A program made the translations under genes and the position numbers. Under the pieces are notes generated by a model that was not told the DNA's origin, made no database searches, and saw only the letters and a program-made list of their open reading frames with translations. Of a stretch of DNA of 64,000 nt, positions 21,901-63,393 are shown piece by piece; position 1 is the first letter of the stretch; every line of letters begins with the position of its first letter. Origin of the DNA: Klebsormidium nitens (Eukaryota > Plantae > Klebsormidiophyceae); the NCBI GenBank assembly GCA_000708835.1, contig DF237309.1:12862-76861 (forward strand). Reading direction: 5' to 3'.

Positions 21901-24900
21901 TGCAGATGAGGGGGGCAGCGAGGGGTCAGGCGACGAGGCAATCGCTTGTCTAGCCAAGGGGAACAAGCGGAAGAAAGTAGGGCAAGGACAGCAAGGGACG
22001 GCCAAGAAAGCAGCGGCTAACAAGAGGAAGAAGAAGGGGAGCGAAGCCTCAGGGGCTGAGTGTGAGCAGGATTCTAGGTCAGAAAGGGACGGGACAAAGG
22101 GAGGGTCAGCCAATGGAGATGAGGCGGTCATCGCGGAAGCCTCAGAACGGAAGCAGGATGAGCAAACGGGGGCCATGCCTGAGCAGGGCCAGAGAGCAAG
22201 TAGCGCAGGGGACGAGCAGGAAGCACTAGTTGGAGAAGAGGCCGGTCAGCCGGCTGAACCGAAGCAAGACGAGGAAATGGAAACGGAAGCAGCAGGGGAG
22301 CCAAAAAGCGCCGCCCAGCGGTCTCCTTTGGCCGCAGCGGCGGCGGGCCTCGGGCGCACCCCCGGGAAGAACGCTCTGGTGCGCGCTAAGCCGAAACCGA
22401 TTGTTAGGCGGGTTGGGGGCAAACCGAACCGGGCGTTCCGGCCCCCTGCCAGGGTGAAGGCTGCGGAAACGGAAAGTGGGCAGGAGGGGCCCGCAAAGAA
22501 GCCAAAAGGTGGGGCAAAGAAAGCGGTCCCCACTAAAGCAGCGGTAGCGGACATTGCGGAAGAGGCTGAGGAAGAGGATGCGCAGCAGGGGGGCCTGCAG
22601 CCATCGGAGGGGGCCAGTCAGGAAGAGGAAGGCCAAGCGGGCAAGAGGAAGGGCGGACCAGCAGACGGGGACGAGCAAGGGGAGAAGAAAGTGAAGAGCG
22701 GGAAGAAGAAACGGAAGCTAGCCAGCAACGGTAGTGTTGTGGTGGGGAGGCGCAGCGAGGAGATGGTAACGCCTGCCAAGGGGGCAGAGAGAAAGTCGGG
22801 GTCCGCAGGGGGTGCACCAGAACCAGCGGCTGAGCCAACGAGCGACGACCTGAGGCACGAGGCGGCGGGTGGAGGGCCGAAGCCCGAAGAGGAGTGCGGA
22901 ACAGCCTCCGCACTGGATCCGACAAAAACAGGGGCAGGTGTTGTTGAAAAGGAATGCGAGGGGGGGAAGGAAAAGAAAGAGGGCAAGCAGAGTAAGAAGG
23001 GGGGCAAGAAGCCCCAAGGGGTCAAGAAAGGGACCGGCGAAATCGAGGGAGGGGACATAAAGGAAGCGGCGAAGGCGGATTCGCTGATTGAGGCAAACAA
23101 GGAGAACATCAAAAGCGAAGCCGAGAAAGCCGCAGCGCAGGGGGTGTCCTGCGAGGCGAAGAGCAGCCTGGGAGGAGCGCAAACGGCGCCCTACTTTGCG
23201 TTTGGAGGGAGCGGGGAGCAGAAGGACAGCATGGTCAAGAAAGTCAAGGTCAGGCGAACGTCACCTGTGCGCGTCTCGAGCATTCGCAGTTGGGCGTGCC
23301 TGCTTCACTCCGGTGCCCAGAGCGGCTGCAGCGGGGCTACTCCGACCCCTTTTGAGTCGTTTCCCCCATCGTTTGCACTGCCACGTCAAGCGAATGGTTC
23401 AAGTTACTCAAGAAAGTCTGCCCCGCATTTCGAAAGGGATTTGGTACCTCGCTTAACTACCAGCGAGTCACCGGCCGTTTCACGGACGCTTCATTGGCTT
23501 CACGTCCCTGAAGCTCTTCGACAGCCCACTTCCGGTCTCGGTACCGATCTACGTGGACGATCTCTTGCAGGCGCTGGGCGGCCGCGTGGCGCGGCTGGGC
23601 CACGAATTTGACCGCAAGACGACCCACGTGGTGCATCCCCCGCCCCTGAAACGCACCGAAAAGGTGCTGGCCGCGCTTGCTGCTGGACTCTGGCTGCTGC
23701 AGCCGGCCTTCCTCACCGCCAGCAAGCCCGCCGGGGGGTAAGGAACGAGCTCGCGTGTGACAAAAGACCCTTTTGCCGGTCGTCAAACCTGGAAATTCGT
23801 AGACGAGCGCTTTTTAGATGGTCGACCAAGTGTGATCAACACTGATCCTTGCAAGGGATCCCCCCCCGCTTTTCTTTGTCGCACAAGCTTTCTATTCGAT
23901 TCGTCCTCCCTCTGTCCGTTCCATTGCTGAAAGCGAAAATGAATCACAGACTGACTTGCTTGCGGAAGTTTGCCACTCAAGCGAAATATCTGTATTGCGG
24001 AGGCAAGGCGGTTGCAAGGCATGGGTTCCTCGCCACTCGTTGCAGAAACTCTCAGTCAAGCGTTCAAAAGATGCCGACCATTACAGCCGCCCTTCCCGTG
24101 TTCAAAACAAAACAGCAAAACAGCCTCGATACGGTCCCCTTTCAGCGTAGACGAATGAGATTCAAATGCCAATCCACTTCCGTCGACGTTCTCTTTTCTC
24201 ACGTGGAGTTTCTCGCTCCCAGGTGGGCTACCGAAGAGGAGCACGAGTGGGTCCCAGGGACCGGTGACGTGGGCGCGGCTCTTGATTTGTCGGCGCCGCG
24301 CCACTGGCGGCAGCGACGCGCGGAGACGGGGCGGCGTGCGTTGCAGGGCCTGCGCGTGGTGTTGTACGGCGACTTCCAGAACCCGACCACTGACGCGCTC
24401 AAGCGAATCGTGCTCGCGGGGGGCGGCCAGGTGAGGCGGCACGAACAAACTTGCGGCTGCCCTTGGAGTGAGGGTTGATTCAGGTTTAAGCTGGATTGCT
24501 CCCTTGTTGGGATTTGCCACGATAGCTGGTTGGCGTTGTGGCTTGATTTAAGATGATCGACCGCTCGAATTGACTGGGCTTTGTCGTGGCGTACTGATAT
24601 CGGCTCAATCCTTTCTTTGAGATGGACGATGCACGAAGGCACCAACAGAGTGTCCAAAACAGGCACGGTCGACTGACGCTTCGACGGTTATCCTTGCGTT
24701 TCTGCTTCTCCTTTCACAAAGCCACACTGAATATCCACGCTTCTCACGTTGAGCTCGTTCCTTAATTGTGTGGTTTGTTTCGTCGTTATTCCGCTTTTTG
24801 GACGCCCTCTTTTTGCCCTGCCAGGTGTTGGCCAGCGGCCCCGGTCCCCTCAAGCTGCCCGCTGCGAGTGCGAGCAGCGTACAAGTCGCCATCATCGGAG

Positions 24901-25469
24901 AGGGAGTGCTCAGCGCCGACGTGTGCGTGACGGAGCTTTTGGCGGCCGGCGCGGGTTGCGTCAATGCCACGTGGCTCCTGGACACGCTCTCGCTGCCACG
25001 TGGCGATCACTCGCAGCACGTGCTGTTCGGCACGGAGGCCGCCGTGGCTGCCGCCCTCGAGAGCGTCAACAGTGCTCCGGCGGAACCGCAGAAAGGTACC
25101 GGCAAAGGGGTAGGGAAAATGGGGAAGGCAGGACCCAAAGCGAAAGGAGTTCTGCAACCCCATAGTGCAGGAGGGAGCCTTAAGACCAGCGCAAAGACGG
25201 GGAAGAAGGCGGGCAAGGACAAGGGAACTGCGAAAAGCGGGGGTTCGGTTGAAGCTGAGGATAGCGTATTAGAGGAAGAGGATGACGTGGCGTGCGGGGT
25301 GTGCGGCCGCGTGGACCAGGAGGCGGAGATGGTGCTGTGTGACGGCAGAGGGGGGCAGTGTGACCTGGCAGTGCACATCTTCTGCATGGCGCCGCCGTTG
25401 AAACAGGTGCCCGAAGGGGACTGGTTCTGCTCCATCTGCCAGGAAGGACAGGGCGGAGCGAGTCCGTGA
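18988..25469 (+). CDS. BRCT-repeat protein with C-terminal PHD finger (resembles Arabidopsis At4g02110)
   Basis: N-terminal BRCT pair (IFEGVRF...THLI...WVEHC; ISLTGY...THLICYEFKGEKY...VNHRWLEDS), a long E/K/A/G-rich exon (~20908-23249), a second BRCT pair (THVVHPPPLKRTEKVLAALAAGLW; LQGLRVVLYG), and PHD CGVCGR...LCDGRGGQCDLAVHIFCM...GDWFCSIC. Confidence 0.9.
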
Positions 25470-27186: not shown

Positions 27187-30100
27187 TTAGGCTTGTCTTC
27201 CCCCCCTCAGCGACCTCGTTTTCCCGATGGGGCGCGCCTCCTTCTGCATCCCTCGGTTTGTCTCACCGTTACCTACAGCCGAGCCCGACTGGACAGGTGG
27301 CGGCTCCAGGATCGTCGATCCCGCCAAGTCGCGCACCGCTGCCTCCAGGTGCTCAAGACTGCTGCGCATCTGCACAAGCAAACGCGGTGGATACCACGCC
27401 AATTGCCTGCCCTTGGGAGAGCAACAAAAGGAACTTTCCGAAGCCTTCGGAATTCCTATTCAAAGCCTACCTAGTCATGAAATCCAACTGACCGTTTTTA
27501 CTGCAATCAGCAACTACGCCATCCCAACGGACACAAGCTCCGTAGAATAGAAGAAATATGTTACATGCAAACTCAAATGGCAATACGCAGTGCTGCGACT
27601 AGAGCAAAGGCCCGTTCACGCAGACATGTCTGTCTATATATGCGAGAATATCATCTTACATATGTCCGAGTAATAAGAGTCTTCTTACCTTGCGCTTCCC
27701 TGCTGTGGATCTCTTCCGCTTGACACCGGCCAGCGCGTTCTCCCCTTTCCCGCCCAGAAGGGACGCCCCGACCATTCCGTTTTCCGTACCTTCCATTTCT
27801 TCCCCTCTTGTCCCATCCACAGCCATCTCCGCTCCCTCCGACTTTTGCTTGCCCGCCAGTGAGCTAGGGCCACGTGGCACTCCCTGATGGATTCCATTGG
27901 GCAACTTCCCGCCGTTCTCAACCGGCGTCTCGTCTCCTTCCGTAGCTTTGCTCTCCGCTCGAGCTGCCACCTGTTTCTGCTCGGTGCGACTTGTACCGGG
28001 CAGCTCCTGGGAGTGGCCGCCAATGTTGCTGTTGGCCCGGTTTGGAGGCCCCGGGGGAGACGGCTCGGACGGCAACTGAAGCCCCTTCTGAGGGCCCTGC
28101 AAATGGAGATGGGGATTGGTTAGCTTTTCGAGACTGGAAAACCTTGTGAAAACTTCAGATGTGCCGAAAAAGCGCAAAACGAGGTTTTACAAAAGGTCAA
28201 GTGGAACTTTAAAAACCCTCGTCTAGTGGCTGTGCCTGTCTTTGAGTTTCTTTGAACGCCTGTATCAAGGTGCTTTAAACTCGACGATCCAAGAAACACG
28301 GATTAACAGCGAGGACCCAGACTCACGCTGACTTGCACAAAGCTGAGTCTCCTTCAGCCTGCGATGCAAGAGCGCTAAACCTGGCCTTACCTTGCCTGCC
28401 TTCTTTGGGCCCTTCCCCTTGGCCCGGGGCTGCCCCCCGGGGGCGCACCGCGGGCACACCACAATGGCCGGCACACTGTCCCGGTCCCGGATCCGCAGGC
28501 AGCGCGTGTGCAGCCACGTGGCACACGTGTCGCACTCTGCCATGCGCTCCCCGTCGTCGTCCTTCGTGCCACAAAGACAGTCCACCACCCAGCTCTCCAG
28601 CCCCGCCTCGAACCGCGCCTCGCTCGCAAGATCCGCGCCCGCACCGGTACCTGTGAGCGACCACAGCGCCACGATCGCAGGATCGTCTTGGCCGGGGGGC
28701 AACGGGTGCACTTTTCCCGTTCTCTGCTCCCCCCTGTTGAGACTACCTAGTGACCCTTCCGCTTGCTGTTTCCCCACAAGTAACCCTGCGTTCTGCTCAC
28801 CCCAAGCTGCAGAGAAGTGACGGGGGACACCCCCTCCGGCGCCTTCTTCCGACGCCTCTCTCTTCGTATTCGTTGGCCCGCCCCCACCTAGCTGCCCAAA
28901 CTCAAGCGCCATGTCAGTAATAAGGCCTCCCCCCGTTTCGAGGGGTGCACTGCTGGGCTCCCAGGGTCCTCCCCCACCCGTCGCTTGCCCCGCTTCCGCC
29001 AACCCCTCCTGACGTGGACTGTCCCCGAGCTCTCCCATAGTAACGTCAGCAGCCGACTCGGACGGATAGGTCACTCTGTCCGTTCCCCCAAGCGCACTCC
29101 CCTTGCTATTCGCCTTGTTCACCTCCCTCCCAAATCCGAAGCTCCTCTCCTTCGCTAACAGGGGCCTTACCGCCGCCTTGTCCGGCGTCCCCCCCCACCC
29201 CTCAACTCGCGTCACCCGGAATGACCTCATCATGACGTACATCTCCTGAAACGCACTCCCCGCTTCCGCTTTCAGCTCCTTGAACGTCGCCCCCGAGGGA
29301 AGCACAAGCAGCTCCTGCGGGGGGTCGCATTTCGCCCGTGGATTCGGCCCCTGATCTTGAAGCTTTACCCCAAACAAAAGCCGGATGTCCGCCCCCTGGC
29401 CCGGCTCTTGACACCGCGACTCGCCACGTTCCCCGTGATAGCTCTTGATGAACTTTTTGGTGTTGTGGATCGCTTTGGACGCGCGCAGCACAGCGACGGG
29501 GTCGATCGGCGAGGGGTCGGTGTGAACGGCCACCGAGAGCCCATTCCCCACGTGCTTCGGCTCAATCCCCTCCCTTGAAACACCAAGCGGTTCCTCCTTC
29601 CCCGTCGTCGCCGCTCGTCCGCGATGCTCAATAGCGATTTCTTCATTCGCCTCCTCCCTTACGTCACTGGCCAGATGCGAAACGCTCCCATTCACATGGA
29701 TTTCAGCAAAGGCCGCCGGCACTTGCGAACCAGATCCTGTTCGCCATTCCTGTTTGGCCTCCACCAGATCTAGCTCCTTCTTTTCCGGCTTCTTCTCCTC
29801 ACCCTCAGGCCCCTGCGTCTTCGAAGTGCCAAACTTCCCTTCTGCCCCGCGACCATGTGGCTGATACTCCTCAGGAGCTTCCTTTTTGACCGCAAATTTT
29901 CCATTTCCCGTCAGCCCGTCCCTGTTGCCCGCCTCATGCACGCAACTCTCCCCCTTCCCTGAAGTACTATTTATCTTCTCGTCCGTTTGCAGCAGACCCC
30001 CTGCCGAACCGCTTTCAAACCCCTTTCCGGTAAATTCTCCTCCTCCCGTCCCCTCCGCAACACTGGTCAGGGGGGTCATTCCCAGCGGCGTTTCCTCCCC

Positions 30101-33100
30101 CCCGAAAGGAGTGGTGGGCGCAATGCCGAGGGCGGGGTTGACGGATCCCGTACGGCGCAGCTTGCGCGCGGCTTTGTACGAGAGCACCACCTGCTGCTGC
30201 AAGTATCGCAGGTCCTTTACCACGTCCTGCTTTGTCAGCTTGTGCGCGCCGGCAGCAGTCACGCCACCTGCGAGTCCGGAAAAGCTGAGTGAGCACGGCA
30301 TTCATCCAACAAGAGAAAGAACTCGAAGAGAAGGGAGCTTATGGACGTAGAACTCAATATTGCTCCGGCCAAACGCAGATGGTATAACGCTCCCCAGATG
30401 CAAGGAGCGCAATCGAAATCTGCCTTGAAAGCAAGATCGCTCCGCTTTCCTGCCGGGTCTGACGCTCGTTTTGAATCAACTTACCAAAATTGCCTGCAAT
30501 GGAATCCCTTAGTAAGCCTCGGAAACATATTTGTGACTGACAGATTTACCACCGCAGTTTGGGGCTTCCATGTTGACTGCCCAAGCAAGGCAGGTGTAGC
30601 GGTGACAACAAGCAGCACGACCGCACAGCCTTACCTGGCGTCCCCTTCTGCGGGCTTCCAGCAACCCTCCTAGAGCGTTCCGGCCGCGCGCCATCATCTG
30701 CCCCCGCCGCCGTTTCTTCCGAGCCACCCCCCTCGGGCCCCTGCCTTTTCTTCCCCATCGTCCCCGCTTCCCCCTGTTTCGCGGTGCTCACACCCTCACT
30801 TTGCATTCCCGGCAAGTACAAACTCCTCCGGGCGGTTTTTGCCGCGGCACCTCCGCGCAAATGGTTCGCTGCCACGACGTGCTTGGACCCGGACCCCTTC
30901 CCACTTCCGCTTTCCTTCTGCATCCCCTCCCTTTCCGCTGGCCGTTCGGATGCACCCGTCTCTGCGGGGACGTCCGATGCTCCTTTTTTTGCGCCAGCTT
31001 CCATCTCCGCACCTTGCCCTCCCTCATTGCCTTTCCTTTCGCTCACGGCAGCCCCGGCGTCCTCAGCTTTTTCAGCACTTCCGTTCTCTGCAATCGCCGG
31101 GCTGGGGCCAGGTTCTCCGACCTGCCCTGAGGTTTTGCCCTCTCCCGAAAAGTGGTCGGAAGCTGAAACCCCGACCTTTTCCGTGGCCTCAGCAGCAACG
31201 GGAGGCGCAGTGAGGTCCACGGCGCCAGCGTGGTTCCCGAGGACCTCCAGCCTGGAAAAGAAAAGAAGGCCCGCTCAGGAACTGTGAGGGTTTGCTCGAA
31301 CGAAGAAGGGAACGAACAAGGCAGGATCCGCGACGCTGGAGCTTTGCTTGAAACCATCGGAACAGATTTGCATTCCACCTGAGTAACGTGACTGCTCCAA
31401 TAGGCAAGCTCGAAACTAGACCTCCTATGAAGCCTACAAACTATGTTAAAAGATTCACCATGTGGGATGAAACCAAACAGCAAAACGAAAACACTCGTAC
31501 AGCCCAGAGAAAGACCAGAATATCCGCTGTTCACGCACACCTGGGCCCAATCCAAAAACACATTCTAAGCGGAAATCCCCCGAAGAAATGCCGTCAAATT
31601 CTTAAGAACCAACAGCGCAAAAGTAATTGCTTACCTATATTCCATGACGTGGCTATCCGGGTGCACCATGCGCCGCACGACGGCCCCTCCGCCCACTTCC
31701 AGATTCTCCACCACCCGCAGCGCGTAGTTGAGCAGCCCGGTGTCCCCGATCTTGGTGCGTGCCTTCTCTTTCAGGCTGACACGTGTCATCCACGTGTTGT
31801 CCGGCAACGTCCGGATGATGCTCACCAGCGCTTTGATTGCATCGTCAATGCGGCGCGGGGTGTACCTACAGAAGATGTAAGGTCTGCTCGGTCGTCGATG
31901 AGTATTTTGAAAGATAATTACACAAACAAGGACTCAGGAAAACTCGGAACAGAACGGCAACTTTTGCTCGTAAACATCGGCTGCAGGAGGATCTGTTGGT
32001 TCTCAAACCGAACTTATCCCCGATTGATAACGCGAAAAGTCGTCAACAAAAGAAACTAGAAAGCAGCTCTTGCAATCTTCAAAGAAAGCTATCAGAAAGA
32101 AGCTTGAAATTGTGCAGAATCTTGCTATCACGGACGGTGGAGCCAACTTCAAAGTTCGTAGTCAAAGGCCGAGTTCCGCGCTATCTGCAGGTCGACCTTG
32201 GGGCCAACCTTCTCTCCCCACCTGCTCTTGCCGCTGTCCACGGAGGGGCTCCTGGTGCTCTCGCGCGACGACTCGAAGGTGCGCACCAGCTTCGACATCG
32301 ACCCCTCCGGCATCGGCGGCTTCCCCGCCGCCCGCCCGCTCTCCCCAACCTCCCTCTCCGGCGTCTGCTCCGGGGGGGAGTACGACAGCTGCAACGCCGA
32401 CCCGGGGTCTGCCCCCCTCCCATGCCGCGGGGGCCGCTTCGGTGTCCGCCGCACCGCGGGCGTGCGCGGCCCTTCGCTCGCCGCACGCGCGCTTTCGTAC
32501 GCGCTTCGCTGGAGAGGCGACGCCGCCCGCGCCCGGGGACTCCGAGCCGCCTCTGAACCAGTCACGCCTCCGGGTTCGGTAACCTGACCTTTTTCGCCCT
32601 CACTTGCCAGTGAATGCGGAAAGCTGACGTCACCATTGGCGGCGGGCCCGTTCTCCTGCTCCCCGAGGCGCGTCCTCTTGGCCTTCCTCCGGAGCGCTGC
32701 CTCGCTGTCGAGGCTGCCGTCGCGCTCAAACCCAGCCCCGCTCATCCCCAAAACGCGCGCCTCTTCCTCCAACCGCTGCCGCGATCTCCGCGGCCCGGGG
32801 CTCTCCTCCCGAGCTACCTCCCCCGCTTTGCGTTTCCGGGGGGACACGGGCGGCGACCCGTTGCCCCTTGGTGACGTCCTCGTTAGCGGCTTTTTGGGCG
32901 ACCTCATCGGCGAAGTAGCTGGCAGCTTGCCCGGGGACTTGGTGGACAATTTCCCGGGCGACTTGGCTGGTGAACTCCGGGGGCTCTTGCTCAGGTTCGG
33001 TGAGCGGGGGCTGCTGCTGCCGTTCCCGAGACCCATCCTTTGGCGAAACCCAACCTTTAGTCCTTTAGCCGGCCGCCGCATGTTCTGCGTCCGGGCCTTT

Positions 33101-51075: not shown

Positions 51076-51297
51076 TGGAGTCTAGGAGGGTGGAAAAAAA
51101 GAAACTGAAAAGACCACGCATTGACGGCCATGAAGAAAGGCTGCTTGACAATCAGACTGACCAGATCCTCTCCGACTCGACGAGACTGGTAGAGATTCTG
51201 TTCCCGGTTATCCTGCGGAGTCCGCTTGCTTGAAAAGGGCAAAATTCTGCTCTCTTCTTGTTTGAAGTGCAGCTCGACCGGATGAAGGACATCGGAA

Positions 51298-51838
51298 ATT
51301 AGGGACTTCGCCGGATGTATGCCGGAAGTGTGCCGAGCCCAGACCGCTCACGCCGGCTGTGTGCCGGCTTTTTGCCGCGTGTACCCCGCGGCTGCCGCGT
51401 GTACCAAGGCTGCTGCCGGTACGGGTAAGCCGACTGCCGACGCTCATCACGCGGCAGGGCGCCGGCGACAACTATCGCCGGTCCGGCGGGACCTGGTGCC
51501 GGGCGGCTTTCCGGCTGAATAATCAGAAAAGCTTGGTGCCGGCAGGACAAACCGGGGGTTGTGCCGCCACACTGCCGGCCGGTATTGCAGGTGCCGCGGC
51601 CGGTCTCGGAGATCGCCGGAGCATATGGGCAGGTGCTGCCGGCCGGCTTGGTCGGCGAGTTACTATCGGTACTATGCGGTGCCGGGGTTTGCCGGCTGTA
51701 CGCCGGATGGGGCCGCGTGTAAGCCGTAGGCGGCCGCGTGTACGCCGGCAAGTGCCGTGTACGCCGGCTAATGCCGTGCCGGCAACTGTGATGCCGCTAG
51801 CCGCGCGAATGATCAAATATGCAACACGAATCGGTCAT
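51298..51838. repeat. GCCG/CGGC-rich block, copy 1 (copy 2 at 53422-53962)
   Basis: Dozens of gccg/gccggc words on both strands. Flanked on each side by catcggaa (51290-51297 and 51839-51846). Confidence 0.75.
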
Positions 51839-52182
51839 CATCGGAAGAAGCGCGCACATAGCTTTCAAAGCCTCTAGTTCCTGCATAATCCAGCTGAAAT
51901 ATGGCCCTCATGCTTCTGGAATGCAATTGCAGCTAAATAGCGGAAGCAAACAACATTGAATGAAACTGAATAATACTGAATGCCCTGATAATCAAGAACA
52001 AATCGTGAATGAGTTGTCATCTTATCAGACTGTGCAGTTCTGATGTGCAGGAATTTGAGCCGTGAGGACTTTGTTACAAAACAAGGTTGTTCTCTGTGAA
52101 CTGTTACGCTATCAAGTTGATCTTTTATGTACATTCTCCACAGGAGCTGATTACTACTATTCTATACTTCCCCTACTCTTAT

Positions 52183-53157
52183 TTACACTACGTACTTGCC
52201 CGGCCTCTTCTTAACCGGGAACCTCCACTCCCCCTGCCCCAGCTTGAGCATAAGGGCCCAGTCCGACTCCATCAGAGTCACCCTCTTGGCGTGAATGGCA
52301 TAGAGGTTTGCCTCCTCAAACATCTTGACGAGGTAGGCCTCCGCCGCCTCCTGCGGTGCGTCGTACGCCTCTTCCGCAAAGCTGAACAAACAAGAGTCGG
52401 TTGACAAAGTGCAAAGTCGCGAGTTCAAGCTACGACGCACAAACTCCAACGGACAACAGCCTCGCTCGTCTTTCGGATCGTATGCGCTCGCAAACTCAAA
52501 CTGAAGACCTTGTTCCTATTCGGGGCACAGATCTATAGAACAGCCCATCAACTTCATAAGAAAGTTGAAACCGCCCATCAACAAATTCAAGCTTATGAAC
52601 ACAGCCCATCAACAATTTTATCTTTGACGAACCAATCAGTAGAAGCATTATGACGACAGCCCATCAACTAAAATTGACAGGCTGGAGTTATAATTCGAAG
52701 CTTCGCGGATGTGGCACAGACCTCTTCGTTGAAAATAACAACCTGATTCATTTGTAGGAATGTTCGCGCCATGATTAAAACCTGAGACACAACAAACCCC
52801 AAAACCTCTGTGGCTGATTCATCGACCACGGCGCAATGTAAGAATGCTCAACAACAATGCAGTCCTTTAGAAGGAAAAGGTTGCATGCAACACTTACTGC
52901 GTGACCACTCCTTTCTTCGGTTGCACCTTCTCTGAGTCCATGACCTCCTTGCACAACCTGCGGAACGCCGTCTTCTTCAGCAGCAGCTCGGATGTCTTCT
53001 GGTACTTTCTGATCTCGCGCAGCGCCACTGTCCCAGCCCTGTACTCGTGCGGCTTGATGACCGGGGGCGCCGTCATCCTAGGGCACTTCGTTGCGGTGGC
53101 CTTCCGCTCCTGAGCCACCCCTGTGCTAGAGCTTGGCAGCTGCTTCGTTCGCGCCAT
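52183..53157 (-). CDS. Divergent histone H3 variant, copy 1 (exons 53157-52898 and 52381-52183; 152 aa)
   Basis: [72 protein letters not shown]...TH|[37 protein letters not shown]. The CA|GTAAG...TTCAG|C splice gives an intact 459-nt frame. Confidence 0.9.
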
Positions 53158-54306
53158 GCTTACTTGCGTCGGCGAAGGGTGCGAGTTGGCAAAAGGCTTT
53201 GCTAAAGCAAGGGCAAACGGGCGCCTTCAAAGAAACGACCTTTCAAAGTTATGGGGACAGGCGGTTCGTCGGCTTCCGATATGTCCATGGACCTCGGGCA
53301 GCCTGCGCTTCAAGACTCGAAAACAGCCTACTGCAGTCATGTGTGAGTGTCAACTCGTTCGACGAAGCAGAGTCATGGAGTNNNNNNNNNNNNNNNNNNN
53401 NAAGCGCACCTTCCATCGGAAATTAGGGACTTCGCCGGATGTATGCCGGAAGTGTGCCGAGCTTAGACCGCTCACGCCCGATGTGTGCCGGCTTTTTGCC
53501 GCGTGTACCCCGCGGCTGCCGCATGTACCAAGGCTGCTGCCGGTACGGGTAAGCCGACTGCCGACGCTCATCACGCGGCAGGGCGCCGGCGACAACTATC
53601 GCCGGTCCGGCGGGACCTGGTGCCGGGCGGCTTTCCGGCTGAATAATCAGAAAAGCTTGGTGCCGGCAGGACAAACCGGGGGTTGTGCCGCCACACTGCC
53701 GGCCAGTATTGCAGGTGCCGCGGCCGGTCTCGGAGACCGCCGGAGCATATGGGCAGGTGCTGCCGGCCGGCTTGGTCGGCCAGTTACTACCGGTACTATG
53801 CGGTGCCGGGGTTTGCCGGCGGTACGCCGGATGGGGCCGCGTGTAAGCCGTAGGCGGCCGCGGGTACGCCGGCAAGTGCCGTGTACGCCGGCTAATGCCG
53901 TGCCGGCAACTGTGATGCCGCTAGCCGCGCGAATGATCAAATATGCAACACGAATCGGTCATCATCGGAAGAAGCGCGCACACAGCTTTCAAAGCCTCTA
54001 GTTCCTGCATAATCCAGCTGAAATGTGGCCCTCATGCTTCTAGTATGCAATTGCAGCTAAATAGCGGAAGCAAACAACATTGAATGAAGCTGAATAATAC
54101 TGAATGCCCTGATAATCAAGAACAAATCGTGAATGAGTTGTCATCTTATCAGAGTGTGCAGTTCTGATATGCAGGAATTATAGCCGTGAGGACTTTGTTA
54201 CAAAACAAGGTTGTTCTCTGTGAACTGTTACGCTATCAAGTTGATCTTTTATGTACATTCTCCACAGGAGCTGATTACTACTATTCTATAGTTCCCCTAC
54301 TCTTAT

Positions 54307-55279
54307 TTACACTACGTACTTGCCCGGCCCCTTCTTAACCGGGAACCTCCACTCCCCCTGCCTCAGCTTGAGCATAAGGGCCCAGTCCGACTCCATCAGA
54401 GTCACCCTCTTGGCGTGAATGGCATAGAGGTTCGCCTCCTCAAACATCTTGACGAGGTAGGCCTCTGCCGCCTCCTGCAGCGCGTCGTACGCCTCTTCCG
54501 CAAAGCTGAACAAACAAGAGTCGGTTGACAAAGTGCAAAGTCGCGAGTTCAAGCTACGACGCACAAACTCCAACGGACAACAGCCTCGCTCGTCTTTCGG
54601 ATCCTATGCGCTCGCAAACTCAAACTGAAGACCTTGTTCCTATCCGGGGCACAAGAATAGAATAGCCCATCAACTTCATAAGAAAGTTGAAACCGCCCAT
54701 CAACAAAATCAAGCTTATGAACACAGCCCATCAACAATTTTATCTTTGACGAACCAATCAGTAGAAACATTATGACGACAGCCCATCAACTAAAATTGAC
54801 AGGCTGGAGTTATAATTCGAAGCTTCGCGGATGTGGCACAGACCTCTTTGTTGAAAATAACAACCTGATTCATTTGTAGGAATGTTCGCGCCATGATTAA
54901 AACCTGAGACACAACAAACCCCAAAACCTCTGTGGCTAATTCATCGACCACGGCGCAATGTAAGAATGCTCAACAACAATGCAGTCCTTTAGAAGGAAAA
55001 GGTTGCATGCAACACTTACTGCGTGACCACTCCTTTCTTCGGTTGCACCTTCTCCGAGTCCATGACCTCCTTGCACAACCTGCAGAACGCCGCCTTCTTC
55101 AGCAGCAGCTCGGATGTCTTCTGGTACTTTCTGATCTCGCGCAGCGCCACCGTCCCAGCCCTGTACTTGTGCGGCTTGATGACCGGGGGCGCCGTCATCC
55201 TAGGGCACTTCTTTGCGGTGGCCTTCCGCTCCCGAGCCACCCCTGTGCTAGAGCTTGGCAGCTGCTTCGTTCGCGCCAT
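54307..55279 (-). CDS. Divergent histone H3 variant, copy 2 (exons 55279-55020 and 54505-54307; 152 aa)
   Basis: Same structure as copy 1. [54 protein letters not shown]...[11 protein letters not shown]...AIHAKRVT; intact frame. Confidence 0.9.
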
Positions 55280-56624
55280 GCTTACTTGCGTCGGCGAAGG
55301 GTGCAAGTTGGCAAAAGGCTTTGCTAAAGCAAGGGCAAACGGGCGCCTTCGAAGAAACGACCTTTCAAAGTTATGGGGACATGCGGTTCGTCGGCTTCCG
55401 ATATGTCCACGGACCTCGGGCAGCCTGCGCTTCAAGACTCGAAAACAGCCTACTGCAGTCATGTGTTAGTGTCAACTCGTTCGACGAAGCAGAGTCATGG
55501 AGCNNNNNNNNNNNNNNNNNNNNNNNNNNNNNNNNNNNNNNNNNNNNNNNNNNNNNNNNNNNNNNNNNNNNNNNNNNNNNNNNNNNNNNNNNNNNNNNNN
55601 NNNNNNNNNNNNNNNNNNNNNNNNNNNNNNNNNNNNNNNNNNNNNNNNNNNNNNNNNNNNNNNNNNNNNNNNNNNNNNNNNNNNNNNNNNNNNNNNNNNN
55701 NNNNNNNNNNNNNNNNNNNNNNNNNNNNNNNNNNNNNNNNNNNNNNNNNNNNNNNNNNNNNNNNNNNNNNNNNNNNNNNNNNNNNNNNNNNNNNNNNNNN
55801 NNNNNNNNNNNNNNNNNNNNNNNNNNNNNNNNNNNNNNNNNNNNNNNNNNNNNNNNNNNNNNNNNNNNNNNNNNNNNNNNNNNNNNNNNNNNNNNNNNNN
55901 NNNNNNNNNNNNNNNNNNNNNNNNNNNNNNNNNNNNNNNNNNNNNNNNNNNNNNNNNNNNNNNNNNNNNNNNNNNNNNNNNNNNNNNNNNNNNNNNNNNN
56001 NNNNNNNNNNNNNNNNNNNNNNNNNNNNNNNNNNNNNNNNNNNNGGACTTTACAGTAGCTTCGTCACCTGTCCACATAATAATAGTAGCTAAGTAGTGCA
56101 ATTGTACAGCGACTTGTAATGTTTGCCACAGAATTAGTCGTGCTGGATCAGATGTAGTGACGTACACAAAGAACAGAGCTGCACTTTAGACAGATCATAA
56201 GTGTGTACACATTCAATGGTGTAATTGTGCTCGACATTGCAAAGATGCTATACAACCTTGTTCTCCTCATATATGTCACAGCATGCCAAGTAGCGCGCCA
56301 GACTCTATGCTCATTGGACATTTGGAGAACTGGACACGGTATTTCAAGTGCAAGCTCACATGGCGCGGGCCTTCCGGCAGCGGCTTGCAAAGCGTCTGTA
56401 TCAGATTGCGTGCGCCATAATGAGATACGGCAACATTGCCCACGCCTAGGGCGCGCAACATCCAATATTCAACCCCTGGCTTAGGTTTTAGGATCACATG
56501 CGCAGTATAAGTTCCCACAAGGAACAACCGTCTGCATTCTTGAAATTTCTGTTGTAAGCAGGTGGTGTTTGAAAACACCAGATTTTTAGCAGGAACAAGG
56601 TTGCGATAGTGCCTGCTTGTGCCC

Positions 56625-56743: not shown

Positions 56744-57282
56744 NNNNNNNNNNNNNNNNNNNNGAACTTTACAATAGCTTCGTCAGCTGTCCACATAATA
56801 ATAGTAGCTAAGTAGTGCAATTGTACAGCGACTTGTAATGTTTGCCACAGAATTAGTCGTGCTGGATCAGATGTAGTGACGTACACAAAGAACAGAGCTG
56901 CACTTTAGACAGATCATAAGTGTGTACATATTCAATGGTGTAATTGTGCTCGACATTGCAAAGATGCTATACAACCTTGTTCTCCTCATATATGTCACAG
57001 CATGCCAAGTAGCGCGCCAGACTCTATGCTCATTGGACATTTGGAGAACTGGACACGGTATTTCAAGTGCAAGCTCACATGGCGCGGGCCTTCCGGCAGT
57101 GGCTTGCAAAGCGTCTGTATCAGATTGCGTGCGCCATAATGAGATACGGCAACATTGCCCACGCCTAGGGCGCGCAACATCCAATATCCAACCCCAGGCT
57201 TAGGTTTTAGGATCACATGCGCAGTACAAGTTCCCACAAGGAACAACCGTCTGCATTCTTGAAATTTTTGTTGTAAGCAGGT

Positions 57283-57298
57283 GGTGTTGGAAAACACC
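57283..57298 (-). other. Conserved 6-bp-stem / 4-nt-loop hairpin downstream of orphan-family stops (also 56564-56579, 58990-59005; imperfect at 59366-59380)
   Basis: Sense-strand GGTGTT-TTCC-AACACC-ACC (A), GGTGTT-TTCA-AACACC-ACC (A copy), GGTGTT-TCCA-AACACC (B) and GGTCTT-TCA-AACACC-ACC (C1). Confidence 0.55.
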
Positions 57299-57343
57299 GG
57301 ATTTTTAGCAGGAACAAGGTTGCGGTAGTGCCTGCTTGTGCCC

Positions 57344-58003
57344 TCATATGCATGAGTCGAGATAGGCGAGCTCCTGGTTCCACACGTCAATCTCAATCCC
57401 AAGCATTGGGTCACCATCCACCTTGGCAAGTGACCTTTCCGCTCTGCGACGCTTCAAGATCATGTCTGTCGCAATAGGCTGAAAACCCCCCTTAATTTGC
57501 CATGGCGTCCACTTCTTGTACGGATACCAAGCGGGCAGCTCTGCCACCTTTGCCATGATCATGGCCTCATCCAGAGGGCCAAGACCTTCATCCTTGACAA
57601 ACTTCTGGACAGCTCGCCTCCATTTGGGGTGATGGGTCTTCCACCAATCGTCGTCAAGCTGCCTCCTCACTTTGTTGCCACCCCTGCGTCTCCATATTTT
57701 ACCATCTTTTGTCACTGTTATTTCAAGTGACTCACTGGTTGCAATGCTGAGGATTTCCCCCTCAACCCATTCTTTTTGAACGATTGGGCACTTTGCTACT
57801 TCATGCTTGCACGTCTCTTTGGCCTCCCTCAGCTTCTGTGCAACTGCCTTGCTATGCGCCCGTACGGGCCCGGTAGGACACGACACCCAGTAACGTGGGG
57901 CGGTACCAGGCCTTCTCCTCTTCCACGGTATGAGAATACCCGTACTGCGCGGCGTCTGAACGGGCGCGGCAGAACACAGCGAAGAAGGGGAAGGGAGACG
58001 CAT
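57344..58003 (-). CDS. Orphan basic protein, family member A (219 aa, intronless)
   Basis: Open ORF from ATG 58003, clearly paralogous to B and C (core EITVTKDGKIW...QLDDDWWKTHHPKWRRAVQKFVKDEGLGPLDEAMIMAKVAELP). Confidence 0.7.
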   Translation of the reverse strand: MRLPSPSSLCSAAPVQTPRSTGILIPWKRRRPGTAPRYWVSCPTGPVRAHSKAVAQKLREAKETCKHEVAKCPIVQKEWVEGEILSIATSESLEITVTKDGKIWRRRGGNKVRRQLDDDWWKTHHPKWRRAVQKFVKDEGLGPLDEAMIMAKVAELPAWYPYKKWTPWQIKGGFQPIATDMILKRRRAERSLAKVDGDPMLGIEIDVWNQELAYLDSCI

Positions 58004-58390
58004 GGCGGCTGATGTTTGGCGGACCGCCTTCACCTTGTCGCTCAAGTAGTAGAAGTATCCGCTTCAAGCTTTCAAGTTGATTCAAGGCATTCAAGTTCCA
58101 TGGCATGGTTGAGATGTCGAGGCGCCAGAGTTGGCGCCGAAAACGCTCAATCTGTGCCGTCCGTTGTGCCACGCTGGCAAAATCTGCTTCGTGCGATTTA
58201 AAAGTGTATGGAAAACTGCCAGCTTGGCACAACGGACGACCGAGTCCGCTGCCGCCAAGTTTGTGGGTATAATTACAAATTTGAAAATTGTTCAAAAGGT
58301 AGGTTGAGATTGACCAGTGCTCAGAATATTGAACTTCAAATCCCGTTTCCCTCCCCATGCTTGAAGGCGCCCCAGCAACAAGCAGCCGTC

Positions 58391-58942
58391 ATGCCTTTCG
58401 CCGCCCCTTTTTCTTGGACGTGGTGCCCCGCTGGGCGCATCCGTTCCTCAGTCAGCTCCAAGAAAGATGATGACCTGATTTCGAGAAGCTTCAGGGAGAG
58501 GACCAAGCACGAAGTATCTAAGAGCCTGCTGTTGCAAGAACAATGGGTAAAGGGTGAAATTCTGAGCATCACCACCACTGAGTCACTTGTGATCACAGTG
58601 ACAAAAGATGGGACAATCTGGGAACAGGTTGGCAACAAACCGAAGAAGCAACTTTCAGAAGCATGGTGGAAGGCCAAGCACCCCGCATGGAGGCGAGCTG
58701 TACAGCAGTTTGTGAAGGATAAGGGCCTTGGCCCTCTGGATGGGGCCGTCATCATGTCAAAGTTGGCAGAGCTGCCCATGTGGTTTCCACGTAAGGAGAC
58801 ATCGCTGCACAGGATCAAGTGGTTCCACGAGAATGCACGCCGCATGCTGCGTCGCAGAGCGGGCATGAAGGCGAATGAGCCGCTTCCCGATTACATCATT
58901 GTTGCTCTTTGCAAGAAGACACTCAAGGCAGCAAGCAGATGA
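58391..58942 (+). CDS. Orphan basic protein, family member B (183 aa, intronless), head-to-head with A
   Basis: KHEVSK...WVKGEILSITTTESLVITVTKDGTIW...WWKAKHPAWRRAVQQFVKDKGLGPLDGAVIMSKLAELP aligns to A almost without gaps. Confidence 0.7.
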   Translation: MPFAAPFSWTWCPAGRIRSSVSSKKDDDLISRSFRERTKHEVSKSLLLQEQWVKGEILSITTTESLVITVTKDGTIWEQVGNKPKKQLSEAWWKAKHPAWRRAVQQFVKDKGLGPLDGAVIMSKLAELPMWFPRKETSLHRIKWFHENARRMLRRRAGMKANEPLPDYIIVALCKKTLKAASR

Positions 58943-59402: not shown

Positions 59403-59867
59403 CTAGTCCTCATTGTCGAAGGTGCTGCTCAAGATCAGGCACGGGGTGGCACCCGCGCTGGGCACAGTCCATTTCACCGCATGGACGACCTTGCTGGGCA
59501 GCGTAGCCAAATCTCTAATCCCGGCCTGCTTGCGGAAGATGCTGTACACTTTCTTCCGGAAGTTTGCAGCACGATCAGCGGTTGCATCTTTTCTTGGCAG
59601 AATGGCCATTGAAGCCTTAATGATGGCCTTTTCCACATGACCGAGTTTTGTGCCCTTGGCAAAGTCATCCACAATGGAGCCCCAAAACCCGCGCTTGGTT
59701 TCGAACCATTTGGTATCCAGCACCTTCCAATGCTTGCCAGAGTTTTTGGACCTGAAAATGATCCCACGCTTGGTAACTCTGACCATCACATTCTGCTTAG
59801 TAAAGAACACCATTTTGGTTCCAGTTGCCGCCAATCGTTCCATGACTTTTGCAGTCTCTGGCTCCAT
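59403..59867 (-). CDS. Orphan basic protein, family member C1 (154 aa)
   Basis: ATG 59867 to TAG 59403. Core VRVTKRGIIF...VLDTKWFETKRGFWGSIVDDFAKGTKLGHVEKAIIKASMAILP. Confidence 0.7.
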   Translation of the reverse strand: MEPETAKVMERLAATGTKMVFFTKQNVMVRVTKRGIIFRSKNSGKHWKVLDTKWFETKRGFWGSIVDDFAKGTKLGHVEKAIIKASMAILPRKDATADRAANFRKKVYSIFRKQAGIRDLATLPSKVVHAVKWTVPSAGATPCLILSSTFDNED

Positions 59868-60078: not shown

Positions 60079-60540
60079 CTAGTCCTCATTGTCGAAGGTG
60101 CTGCTCAAGATCAGGCACGGGGTGGCACCCGCGCTGGGCACAATCCATTTCACCGCATGGACGACCTTGCTGGGCAGCGGAGCCGAATCTCTAATCCCGG
60201 CCTGCTTGCGGAAGATGCTGTACACTTTCTTCCGGAAGTTTGCAGCACGATTAGCGGTTGCATCTTTTCCTGGCAGAATGGCCATCGAAGCCTTAATGAT
60301 GGCTTTTTCCACATGACCGAGTTTTGTGCCCTTGGCAAAGTCATCCACAATGGAGCCCCAAAACCCGCGCTTGGTTTCGAACCATTTGGTATCCAGCACC
60401 TTCCAATGCTTGCCAGAGTTTTTGGACCTGAAGATGATCCCACGCTTGGTAACTCTGACCATCACATTCTGCTTAAAGAACACCATTTTGGTTCCAATTG
60501 CCGCCAATCGTTCCATGACTTTTGCAGTCTCTGGCTCCAT
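60079..60540 (-). CDS. Orphan basic protein, family member C2 (153 aa)
   Basis: Near-identical tandem copy of C1 with an in-frame 3-nt deletion. Confidence 0.7.
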   Translation of the reverse strand: MEPETAKVMERLAAIGTKMVFFKQNVMVRVTKRGIIFRSKNSGKHWKVLDTKWFETKRGFWGSIVDDFAKGTKLGHVEKAIIKASMAILPGKDATANRAANFRKKVYSIFRKQAGIRDSAPLPSKVVHAVKWIVPSAGATPCLILSSTFDNED

Positions 60541-61435: not shown

Positions 61436-61897
61436 CCAGTCCTCATTGTCGAAGGTGCTGCTCAAGATCAGGCACGGGGTGGCACCCGCGCTGGGCACAG
61501 TCCATTTCACCGCATGGACGACCTTGCTGGGCAGCGGAGCCGAATCTCTAATCCCGGCCTGCTTGCGGAAGATGATGTACACATTCTTCCGGAAGTTTAC
61601 AGCACGATCAACGGTTGCATCTTTTCCTGGCAGAATGGCCATTGAAGCCTTTATGCTGGCTTTTTCCACATGACCGAGTTTTGTGCCCTTGGCAAAGTCA
61701 TCCACAATGGAGCTCCAAAACCCGCGGTTGGTTTCGAACCATTTGGTATCCAGCACCTTCCAATGCTTGCCAGAGTTTTTGGACCTGAAGATGATCCCAC
61801 GCTTGGTAACTCTGACCATCACATTCTGCTTAAAGGACACCATTTTGGTTCCAATTGCCGCCAATCGTTCCATGACTTTTGCAGTCTCTGGCTCCAT
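61436..61897 (-). CDS. Orphan basic protein, family member C3 (stop TAG reads as TGG at the gap edge)
   Basis: Third tandem copy. The apparent stop loss lies at the contig end and may be an error. Confidence 0.6.
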
Positions 61898-62430: not shown

Positions 62431-63393
62431 ATGGCGCACACAAAGCAAACAGCAAGGAAGAGCACAGGAGGAAAGGCGCCAAGGAACCAACTGGCAACCA
62501 AAATAGCCCGGCTTTCAGCTCCTACTACAGCTCGCATCAATAAGCCGCACAGATGACGCCCAGGCACCAAAGCTTTGCGTGAGATCAGGAAGTACCAGAA
62601 GAGCGTTGAGAACCTGATTAGGACGCTTCAAGTTCTAGCGCCTTGTCAGGGAGATTGCTCAGGACTTCAAGACCGACCTGTGAGTCCTTGAATATCCCAA
62701 CATTGCTTTTCAAGATTCAAAGAGTGCTCTAGCATGGTTTTCAAGGTGATGGCGCCCCATCTCCTATAAGGTTTCGTTTGATCGCGGCATCGGAATGCAA
62801 GCGCCTGCTTTAGGGTTTTTGAGGTCAAGCTGCTGTTTACGTAGAGTTGATGAGGTTTGGAATCAAGCCCGTGCATGAAAGGCAAAGGCAGAGCCTCTGA
62901 GGCACACTGGGTGCAGGGGTGATCAACATTGTGCCCTGTGGCTGATTGGTAGTAGTCAGCCTTGTGGGTGCCCCTTGCCTGATTGGTGAGAATCAGCTTT
63001 GTAGGATCCCTGTGGCTGACAGCATCGGCCCTTATCTTCCGACACTGGTGTGTTTTTAGGGTCTACCGGAAGTTGGGCACCATTTGGGGGCCAGATCAGT
63101 TGCCTTCCCTTGAGGCCAAGGGGATGGCGCCAAGGTTCCAATACTCAGAGAAAGAACTGGTCTGTCGGAAAGCATGCTCCAGGCGGAAGTAGTAAGAGTG
63201 CCTTATGTCGAAATGACTTGTTTGCAGGCGGTTTCAGGCGCAGGCTATGCTAGCTATCCAAGAAGCAGCGGAGGCCTACCTTGTCCAGCTCTTTGAAGAC
63301 AGCAACCTGTGCGCCATTCACGCCAAGCGAGTGACCGTCTTGGCGAAGGACATGCAGCTTGCAAGAAGGCTTACGGAGAAGCTGGATCATTGA
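62431..63393 (+). pseudogene. H3: Histone H3 pseudogene (exons 62431-62679 and 63228-63393)
   Basis: [41 protein letters not shown] has a stop at Y41. A 1-bp insertion and a CAG>TAG change occur near RKLPFQRL. The remainder reads VREIAQDFKTDL|[37 protein letters not shown]. Confidence 0.9.

What the first reader, a model, noticed from the sequence alone, without database searches (positions are those of the whole stretch)
52183..55279. Intact histone H3 variant with natural K27M and K36I ('oncohistone'-type) substitutions
Seen: the tail aligns to canonical H3 without gaps from A1 to P30 (anchors R2 T3 K4 Q5, S10 T11 G12, R17 K18, K23, R26, A29 P30). Residue 27 is Met in both copies (ATG at 53076-53074 and 55198-55196; R26-M27-T28-A29-P30). 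Anchoring on K37-P38-H39-x-Y41-R42 puts Ile at 36 and Pro at 34. K9 is Ser and K14 is Ala, while K4, K18 and K23 are kept. Known: K27M dominantly inhibits PRC2 and K36M/K36I inhibit K36 methyltransferases in animal systems, and PRC2/H3K27me3 silences transposons in several algae and bryophytes. Inference: this is an endogenous pseudo-substrate histone that resists K9/K27/K36 marks and may lower H3K27me3 in trans. Caveats: C24/P25/T28 could weaken PRC2 binding. By hand count the two copies differ by about 8 replacement and 5 silent changes, so constraint looks modest.
Basis: partly seen in the sequence, partly recalled or inferred. Interest (0 to 1): 0.92.

Follow-up and report, generated by a model that had tools for sequence, protein, structure and literature searches.

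The report
Divergent algal histone H3 lacking K9/K27/K36
A green alga of the Klebsormidium nitens type carries a small, fast-evolving family of histone H3-like genes that have methionine at lysine 27 and isoleucine at lysine 36; the genes are real and at least one is spliced into mRNA, but nothing yet shows that they poison the silencing enzymes as cancer 'oncohistones' do.

Summary
Two minus-strand, one-intron genes (A 52183-53157, B 54307-55279) each encode a 152-aa H3-fold protein. HMMER aligns the tail to H3 without gaps up to P30/P31 and puts Met at 27, Ile at 36, Ser at 9 and Ala at 14. K4, K18 and K23 are kept.

The 20-N gap (53382-53401) lies 225 bp upstream of A's ATG, between two 2.1-kb repeat units. 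It touches no exon or intron.

A third copy, 92% identical and broken, sits on another K. nitens scaffold. A fourth, partial copy is in an ENA metagenome.

One RNA contig joins exactly the predicted GT..AG sites and carries copy A's alleles. Depth is only about 2, and unspliced contigs occur as well.

A and B show no measurable constraint against each other. Exon 2 of B versus the metagenome copy has 2/199 changes, both silent, against 79/965 in non-coding DNA (p=4.5e-5). The fold half was therefore under purifying selection. The tail could not be tested beyond three near-identical copies, and no orthologue was found in 5.8 billion protein clusters.

Best reading: a lineage-specific replacement-type H3 variant that cannot be methylated at K9/K27/K36 in cis, with copies in different states of decay. 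Trans-inhibition of PRC2 remains untested and, at this expression level, unlikely. The scan also noted this stretch as s1-316435.

The parts
51289..53381 (-). Repeat unit A (2.09 kb): 224 bp upstream region, gene A, 3' region with a GCCG-rich minisatellite block
   Evidence: blastn self-comparison, 97.6% identical to unit B; 92.4% identical to L001:9715-11796
53414..55502 (-). Repeat unit B (2.09 kb), same layout as unit A
52898..53157 (-). Gene A exon 1 (tail, alphaN, alpha1, start of loop 1); M27 codon 53076-53074, I36 codon 53058-53056
   Evidence: spliced RNA contig with copy A alleles
52382..52897 (-). Gene A intron, 516 nt, GT..AG, phase 2
   Evidence: the homologous joint was seen in RNA run X2
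52183..52381 (-). Gene A exon 2 (alpha2, alpha3, 17-residue C-terminal extension, stop); carries L-to-P in alpha2
55020..55279 (-). Gene B exon 1; M27 codon 55198-55196, I36 codon 55180-55178
54506..55019 (-). Gene B intron, 514 nt; holds 4-5 copies of a TTGATGGGC motif and a relic of the ATGGCGCGAAC start
   Evidence: (joint 54505/55020, ends CT..AC on the + strand)
54307..54505 (-). Gene B exon 2; protein identical to the metagenome copy L002 over 65 residues
53382..53401 (.). Assembly gap between unit B's 3' end and unit A's 5' end; intergenic
55504..56044 (.). Assembly gap directly upstream of unit B, at the same homologous position as the 20-N gap upstream of unit A
53423..54001 (.). GCCG-rich block of degenerate ~21-nt repeats downstream of gene B (its counterpart in unit A is about 51299-51877)
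62431..63393 (+). Separate H3 pseudogene with a canonical-like tail, an in-frame stop at the Y41 position, a frameshift in alpha1, and one intron near the L82 codon

Best explanation
This is a lineage-specific, fast-evolving paralogue of histone H3 in a Klebsormidium nitens-type streptophyte alga. It is carried on a 2.1-kb unit that has been duplicated at least three times: two scaffold-adjacent copies here, one dispersed broken copy, and one copy in an environmental sample. The gene has one intron and no histone 3' stem-loop, so it looks like a replacement-type rather than a replication-coupled histone. The protein keeps alphaN, alpha1, alpha2 and alpha3 and every H3-invariant residue in a sample of 44 H3-family proteins. 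It has a loop 1 that is 6 residues longer and a disordered 17-residue C-terminal extension. I infer that it can pair with H4 and enter nucleosomes. There its tail keeps the ARTKQ/K4 module but offers no lysine at 9, 27 or 36, so those nucleosomes cannot be marked by H3K9, H3K27 or H3K36 methylation in cis. That is the logic shown for Arabidopsis H3.15 (K27H). Copy B, together with the metagenome copy, preserves the ancestral protein. Copy A is drifting (7 private replacements, including a proline in alpha2) although it is the copy seen spliced. Copy C is broken. Shown: gene structure, splicing, H3 fold membership, the substitutions, and constraint on exon 2. Inferred: translation, nucleosome incorporation, and any effect on chromatin marks.
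For: - Pfam PF00125 hits both exons.
- phmmer to PDB H3 chains gives E 1e-18 for exon 1 and 1e-23 for P0002.
- The AF2 model shows helices at 14-28, 35-49, 63-91 and 99-110, with a disordered C-terminus. All top Foldseek hits are nucleosomal H3 at probability 1.00.
- All 16 invariant columns of the 44-sequence alignment are kept.
- An RNA contig in X2 joins 54505/55020 exactly, and its 7 differences from B are all copy A alleles.
- Exon 2 of B versus L002: 2/199 changes, both synonymous, with no indels. Non-coding DNA: 79/965 changes plus 49 indel columns. Fisher p=4.5e-5, or p=0.016 against the intron alone.
- The family stem is long (1.33 substitutions per site), yet A and B are open over 152 codons. 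That requires past coding constraint.
- No stem-loop lies behind the gene.
- H3.15 precedent: PMC10426802.
Against: - Between A and B the exons differ as much as or more than the intron and flanks (2.7-3.0% versus 1.95-2.7%). dN/dS of 0.47 cannot be told from neutrality (p=0.15).
- The only spliced contig comes from copy A, the more degenerate copy. B-type contigs are unspliced and could be DNA carry-over.
- Signal is present in only a few RNA runs.
- Copy C has a 19-nt deletion in the tail and a 3-nt insertion in alpha2. Two further H3 pseudogenes lie nearby, so the locus is a zone of histone-gene decay.
- An upstream ATG with a 37-codon uORF (in frame with the CDS in copy B) may reduce or alter translation.
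- The residues at the H3.3/HIRA signature positions 87 and 90 are E and D by alignment, so the deposition route is unknown.
Confidence: 0.45

Rival explanations
1. This is a decaying gene family. The variant was once functional, but the copies in this genome are now neutral remnants, and M27 and I36 are two of many tail substitutions with no role of their own.
For: - The A-B exon divergence is not lower than the intron divergence.
- The A lineage has 7 replacement and 4 silent private changes, including L-to-P in alpha2.
- Copy C is frameshifted.
- H3 pseudogenes sit next to both loci.
- RNA is very low and mostly unspliced.
- Only 19 of the 39 residues up to H39 match canonical H3, so loss of three lysines is not out of line. 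In 334 sampled H3-like tails, 21% lack K27.
Against: - B and the metagenome copy share an identical exon 2 protein across about 8% neutral divergence.
- The B lineage has only 1 replacement.
- Both ORFs and both splice sites are intact.
- A correctly spliced mRNA exists.
Confidence: 0.3
2. The protein is a germline-encoded pseudo-substrate that traps PRC2 (through R26-M27) and K36 methyltransferases (through I36), and so lowers H3K27me3 and H3K36me in trans.
For: - The R-M-T-A-P motif is in exact register with H3 R26-K27-S28-A29-P30.
- R26 is a main determinant of K27M binding (PMC4853476).
- K-to-M changes act dominantly in plants as well (PMC12069700, citing Sanders 2017).
- Among 334 sampled tails, the only other R-M in this register is one singleton contig whose cluster-mate is canonical there.
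Against: - Expression is very low.
- C24 and P25 replace A24 and A25.
- G33 and G34 are absent before I36.
- No conservation test is possible.
- PRC2 in this genome was not checked.
- No biochemical data exist.
Confidence: 0.12
3. The 2.1-kb unit is a selfish or mobile cassette that carries an unmarkable histone as an anti-silencing device (the reading of the scan's note s1-316435).
For: - The unit is found with the same 3' end (…CCGATG) in three different flanking contexts.
- The dispersed copy has the same 5' limit as the gap edges.
- Other readers noted transposon-linked H3-like genes in this genome (s1-267532, s1-267561; not checked here).
Against: - No terminal inverted repeats, target-site duplication, LTR, poly-A tail or Helitron-type ends were seen at the L001 boundaries.
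- Pfam scans of 20 of the window's ORFs of 150 aa or more found no transposase, Rep or RT domain.
- Only three or four copies are known.
- Two of the three 5' boundaries are hidden by gaps.
Confidence: 0.08
4. The second copy is an assembly artefact: one locus was assembled twice around gaps.
For: Both units start exactly at gaps, and their adjacency rests on scaffolding.
Against: - The copies differ at 2.4% of sites.
- A-type and B-type alleles are each recovered in independent runs.
- Contig breaks at repeat boundaries are what an assembler is expected to produce at a true repeat.
Confidence: 0.03

Closest known systems
Arabidopsis H3.15 (HTR15), an atypical H3 lacking K27
   Same: It is a lineage-restricted H3 paralogue whose position 27 is not lysine, so the deposited histone cannot receive H3K27me3 (PMC10426802). 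The gene contains an intron and is of the non-replicative type.
   Different: H3.15 has His at 27, whereas this protein has Met, the residue that gives PRC2 trapping in K27M. This protein also lacks K9, K14 and K36, has a 6-residue longer loop 1 and a C-terminal extension, and lacks the H87/L90 signature. Its function is unknown.
H3 K27M and K36M/I oncohistones; EZHIP as a K27M mimic
   Same: The residues are the same and sit at the same aligned positions, with R26 kept. The best PDB sequence matches to exon 1 are K36M mutant H3 chains.
   Different: Oncohistones are somatic single-residue mutants of otherwise canonical H3. This is a germline gene about 50% diverged from H3, with changed residues at 24 and 25 and a deletion of 32-34. 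No inhibition has been shown.
CENH3 / CENP-A
   Same: It is a divergent H3 with a lengthened loop 1 and a long branch in trees.
   Different: Its tail aligns to H3 residue by residue. It does not group with named CENH3 proteins.
Uncharacterised metagenomic H3 proteins with Ile at 36 (P0296, P0287, P0297, P0341)
   Same: They have a natural V-I-K-P-H in place of V-K-K-P-H.
   Different: They are otherwise near-canonical and keep K9 and K27. They were found because they share the word VIKPH with the query, so their frequency is not measured.

Membership tests
Histone H3 family (PF00125, H3 type) | Histone fold alpha1-L1-alpha2-L2-alpha3 preceded by alphaN | tested here: met
   Pfam hits on both exons; AF2 helices at 14-28, 35-49, 63-91 and 99-110; Foldseek top 50 hits are all nucleosomal H3
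Histone H3 family (PF00125, H3 type) | H3-type N-terminus (ARTKQ…) and H3-invariant core residues | tested here: met
   Gapless tail alignment; all 16 invariant columns of a 44-protein alignment are kept
Histone H3 family (PF00125, H3 type) | Pairs with H4 and is incorporated into nucleosomes | not testable with these tools
   Needs reconstitution, chromatin fractionation or mass spectrometry
CENH3 | N-terminal tail not alignable to H3; groups with CENH3 in trees | tested here: not met
   The tail aligns without gaps up to residue 31; the family is separate from six named CENH3 proteins
CENH3 | Lengthened loop 1 | tested here: met
   6-residue insertion in L1
K27M-type PRC2 pseudo-substrate (H3K27M, EZHIP) | Met in the lysine-27 register, preceded by Arg | tested here: met
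   R26-M27-T28-A29-P30 in copies A, B and C
K27M-type PRC2 pseudo-substrate (H3K27M, EZHIP) | Binds and inhibits PRC2; present at an effective dose | tested here: inconclusive
RNA contig depth is about 2 in a few runs. A24C and A25P have unknown effect.
K36M/I-type pseudo-substrate | Hydrophobic residue at 36 followed by K37-P38-H39 | tested here: met
   V-I-K-P-H
   3-residue deletion at 32-34, with Pro adjacent to V35
Replacement-type (replication-independent) H3 variant such as H3.3 or H3.15 | Introns present and no 3' histone stem-loop | tested here: met
   Intron confirmed by an RNA joint; no RF00032 hit behind the gene at E<=1
Replacement-type (replication-independent) H3 variant such as H3.3 or H3.15 | H87/L90 chaperone signature | tested here: not met
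   The aligned residues are E and D
Processed pseudogene | Intronless copy with a poly-A trace | tested here: not met
   A 514-516 nt spliced intron is present, within one codon of the intron position in the neighbouring H3 pseudogene and in the same phase

The most novel reading that the evidence does not exclude
This is a germline-encoded 'natural oncohistone': a histone kept by selection because its R-M-T-A-P tail traps PRC2, and its I36 blunts K36 methylation. It would be carried on a cassette that amplifies in the genome and use this to escape or relieve Polycomb-type silencing of itself or of neighbouring repeats.
Probability: 0.08. Interest if true: 0.9.

Novelty: new variant of a known kind. 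Interest (0 to 1): 0.5.

Why it matters
H3 variants that escape K27 methylation are known to reset Polycomb states in plants (H3.15). K-to-M and K-to-I histones are the best-understood dominant inhibitors of methyltransferases. A natural gene that combines M27 and I36 with loss of K9 would show whether evolution has used the oncohistone mechanism. It would also give a ready-made tool for a streptophyte alga close to the land-plant ancestor. The claim can be tested directly with a peptide, a reconstituted nucleosome and a tagged transgene. If the family turns out to be decaying, it still documents how fast spare H3 copies diverge in this genome.

Tried and rejected
- **CENH3.** Rejected, because the tail aligns to H3 and the tree separates the family from named CENH3 proteins.
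- **Retrogene or processed pseudogene.** Rejected, because the intron is present and spliced.
- **Replication-coupled histone.** No stem-loop was found.
- **Gap inside the gene.** Rejected, because the gap is intergenic.
- **Assembly duplicate.** Rejected on copy-specific alleles in independent runs.
- **Transposon ends.** No TIR, TSD or Helitron-like termini were seen at the only gap-free copy. Pfam scans of 20 of the window's ORFs of 150 aa or more found no transposon protein domain.
- **Orthologue search.** Three word-indexed searches of 5.8 billion clusters and one exhaustive phmmer of 1.84 billion representatives were run. The only proteins above about 62% identity were P0002 (copy C as annotated, starting at M27) and P0151 (a 46-residue ORF whose contig is the metagenome copy L002). 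The representative library is clustered at 50% identity and may hide close relatives inside canonical H3 clusters.
- **Exon 1 of the metagenome copy.** An exact look-up of exon 1 found nothing, so M27 could not be checked in the most diverged copy.
- **Natural M27 precedents.** P0041 looks like a local frame error, because its cluster-mate P0453 is canonical in that stretch. P0090 has an insertion there.
- **Literature.** Searches for Klebsormidium H3 variants and for PRC2 in Klebsormidium gave nothing specific.
- **The search of earlier findings by sequence.** Blank.
Full report
**What is there**

The stretch holds two copies of a 2.09-kb unit: A at 51289-53381 and B at 53414-55502. They are 97.6% identical.

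Each unit carries one minus-strand gene. Reading the sequence and joining at the only in-frame GT..AG pair gives a 459-nt CDS of 152 codons in both copies.
- Gene A: exon 1 53157-52898, intron 516 nt, exon 2 52381-52183.
- Gene B: exon 1 55279-55020, intron 514 nt, exon 2 54505-54307.

Both exons hit the Pfam core-histone model on their own (E 1e-10 to 4e-14).

**The gap**

The 20-N gap at 53382-53401 lies between the 3' end of unit B and the 5' end of unit A. It is 225 bp upstream of A's start codon and touches neither exon nor intron. The 541-N gap at 55504-56044 sits at the same homologous point upstream of B.

A third copy of the unit is on another scaffold of GCA_000708835.1 (Klebsormidium nitens), at L001:9716-11795, 92% identical. 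It has no gap at either boundary, and its homology ends exactly where the window's gaps begin. The gaps are therefore contig breaks at repeat boundaries, and nothing of the gene is missing.

The adjacency of A and B is only a scaffolding statement. They are nevertheless two real copies, because A-type and B-type alleles are each recovered in independent sequencing runs.

**The substitutions**

phmmer against all PDB chains aligns exon 1 to H3 without a gap from the initiator Met to P30/P31. A 3-residue gap follows (T32-G34), and the alignment resumes at V35-I36-K37-P38-H39. The aligned positions are:

| Position | Residue here |
|---|---|
| 27 | Met |
| 36 | Ile |
| 9 | Ser |
| 14 | Ala |
| R2, T3, K4, Q5 | kept |
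| S10, T11, G12 | kept |
| R17, K18 | kept |
| K23, R26, A29, P30 | kept |

The best-scoring PDB chains are K36M mutant H3, because the Ile aligns with their Met.

In the fold, loop 1 is 6 residues longer than in H3, and 17 extra residues follow alpha3. An AF2 model of the annotated paralogue P0002 shows alphaN, alpha1, a long L1, alpha2 and alpha3, with a disordered C-terminus (mean pLDDT 71.5). Its top 50 Foldseek matches are all nucleosomal H3 chains. All 16 columns that are invariant in a 44-protein H3-family alignment are kept.

In a maximum-likelihood tree the family forms its own very long branch (1.33 substitutions per site). It does not join six named CENH3 proteins.

**Expression**

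Words of the gene occur in several places:
- DNA runs of the same organism label (share 0.74-0.88);
- RNA runs of two studies (share 0.05-0.24);
- several metagenomes.

Laying contigs of four runs on unit B gave one 188-nt RNA contig (X2, depth 2.2) that jumps from 55020 to 54505 with ends CT..AC on the plus strand. This is exactly the predicted intron. Its seven differences from B are all copy A's alleles, including the Leu-to-Pro codon in alpha2. Copy A is therefore transcribed and correctly spliced.

Other RNA-run contigs are unspliced and B-like, at depth 2-4. They cover intron and downstream DNA alike, so they may be nascent RNA or DNA carry-over. Most RNA runs of the organism hold none of the words. 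Expression is therefore low or condition-specific.

No histone 3' stem-loop follows the gene. Together with the intron, this points to a replacement-type gene.

**Selection**

Between A and B the exons differ by 2.7-3.0%, the intron by 1.95% and the flanks by 2.4-2.7%. There are 8 replacement and 5 silent changes, giving dN/dS of 0.47, which is not distinguishable from neutrality (p=0.15).

Polarising with copy C shows that A carries 7 replacement and 4 silent private changes, whereas B carries 1 and 1.

Copy C has several defects:
- a 19-nt deletion that frameshifts the tail;
- a 3-nt insertion in alpha2;
- a changed donor context.

Its public annotation (P0002, 'histone H3') simply starts at Met27.

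A fourth copy came from an ENA metagenome contig (L002, 1190 bp), found through the 46-residue ORF P0151. It covers part of the intron, exon 2 and the downstream region, and is 90.6% identical to B. Against B, exon 2 has 2/199 differences, both synonymous, and no indels. Non-coding DNA has 79/965 differences and 49 indel columns. Fisher p=4.5e-5, or p=0.016 against the intron alone.

The fold-coding half has therefore been under purifying selection in the B/L002 lineage. The long family stem with intact 152-codon frames also requires a history of coding constraint. The L002 contig stops inside the intron, so the tail, M27 and I36 could not be tested beyond three near-identical copies.

**Relatives**

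Three word-indexed searches of 5.8 billion clusters and one exhaustive phmmer over 1.84 billion representatives were run. They found nothing closer than generic H3 (49-62% identity) apart from P0002 and P0151.

Among 334 fetched H3-like proteins with an alignable tail, 21% lack K27. Three have Met at or near position 27, and none is a clean case:
- one, P0041, is a singleton contig whose cluster-mate is canonical in that stretch;
- one, P0090, has an insertion there;
- the third was not examined.

Six of the 334 have Ile at 36. Four of these are near-canonical metagenomic H3 proteins, but that count is inflated because they share the search word VIKPH.

**Context**

The locus is rich in duplicated and decaying histone DNA.
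- An H3 pseudogene with a canonical-like tail, a stop at the Y41 position and a frameshift lies at 62431-63393.
- In L001 another H3 pseudogene lies head to head with copy C, next to a gypsy-type integrase fragment.
- Elsewhere the window carries ordinary host-type ORFs: PHD finger, MYND finger and tRNA-ligase fragments.
- No transposon ends were recognised at the gap-free copy.

**Interpretation**

This is the mechanism reported for Arabidopsis H3.15, which has His at 27 (PMC10426802).

The trans part is open.
- For it: the R-M-T-A-P register matches, and R26 matters strongly for PRC2 binding of K27M (PMC4853476). K-to-M histones act dominantly in plants too (PMC12069700).
- Against it: dosage is very low, C24 and P25 replace A24 and A25, G33 and G34 are lost before I36, no conservation evidence exists, and PRC2 in this genome was not verified here.

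My estimates are:

| Reading | Probability |
|---|---|
| Replacement-type, cis-unmarkable H3 variant with copies at different stages of decay | 0.45 |
| Family now wholly decaying | 0.30 |
| Trans-acting inhibitor | 0.12 |
| Selfish cassette | 0.08 |
| Assembly artefact | 0.03 |

**Verdict**

This is a new variant of a known kind (K27-less H3 variants). It is a good, cheap experimental lead, but it is not yet evidence for a natural oncohistone.

Noticed in passing
window 62431-63393 (+): H3 pseudogene with a canonical-like tail (Leu at 27, Asn at 36), a TGA at the Y41 codon, a frameshift in alpha1, and an intron in the L82 codon. That intron lies within one codon of the variant's intron position and has the same phase.
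   Followed up: partly
L001:9050-9322 (-) and L001:7468-8130 (+): On the other K. nitens scaffold, a second H3 pseudogene lies head to head 645 bp from the broken variant copy. A Ty3/gypsy-type integrase fragment lies just beyond it.
   Followed up: partly
window 59403-59867, 60079-60540, about 61440-61897 (-); 57344-58045 (-), 58208-58942 (+): Tandem family of ~153-aa ORFs, and a related longer pair, with no Pfam match. This is the subject of the scan's note s1-316383. They are not histones by Pfam.
   Followed up: partly
window 56045-56510 and 56766-57229: Two copies of a ~465-bp element, each starting right after an assembly gap, and 90.6% identical to L001:79-542. The element therefore occurs on both scaffolds that carry the variant unit: about 540 bp upstream of unit B here (across the gap), but about 9 kb from the unit in L001.
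   Followed up: no
window 57258-57303 (-): Weak match to the histone 3' stem-loop family RF00032 (19.8 bits, below the gathering score of 34, E=0.19).
   Followed up: no
window 54680-54800 and 54884-54899 (intron of gene B; same in A): The intron holds 4-5 spaced copies of a TTGATGGGC(T/G)GT motif and a near-copy of the gene's own start (ATGGCGCGAAC, i.e. M-A-R-T). This may be a relic of an older first exon.
   Followed up: no
window 55280-55462 (-) and 53158-53340 (-): An upstream ATG 183 nt before the start codon opens a 37-codon uORF in copy A. In copy B it runs in frame into the histone CDS, giving a 148-codon first-exon ORF. Its relevance depends on the unknown transcription start.
   Followed up: no
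window 24768-25469 (+) and 28265-30301 (-): Two ORFs with PHD fingers. The second also has an At1g33420-like ubiquitin-like domain. These are possible histone-tail readers about 25 kb from the variant genes.
   Followed up: no
proteins P0296, P0287, P0297, P0341 (metagenomes): Otherwise near-canonical H3 proteins of unknown eukaryotes with Ile at position 36. Natural K36I histones therefore exist outside this genome.
   Followed up: partly
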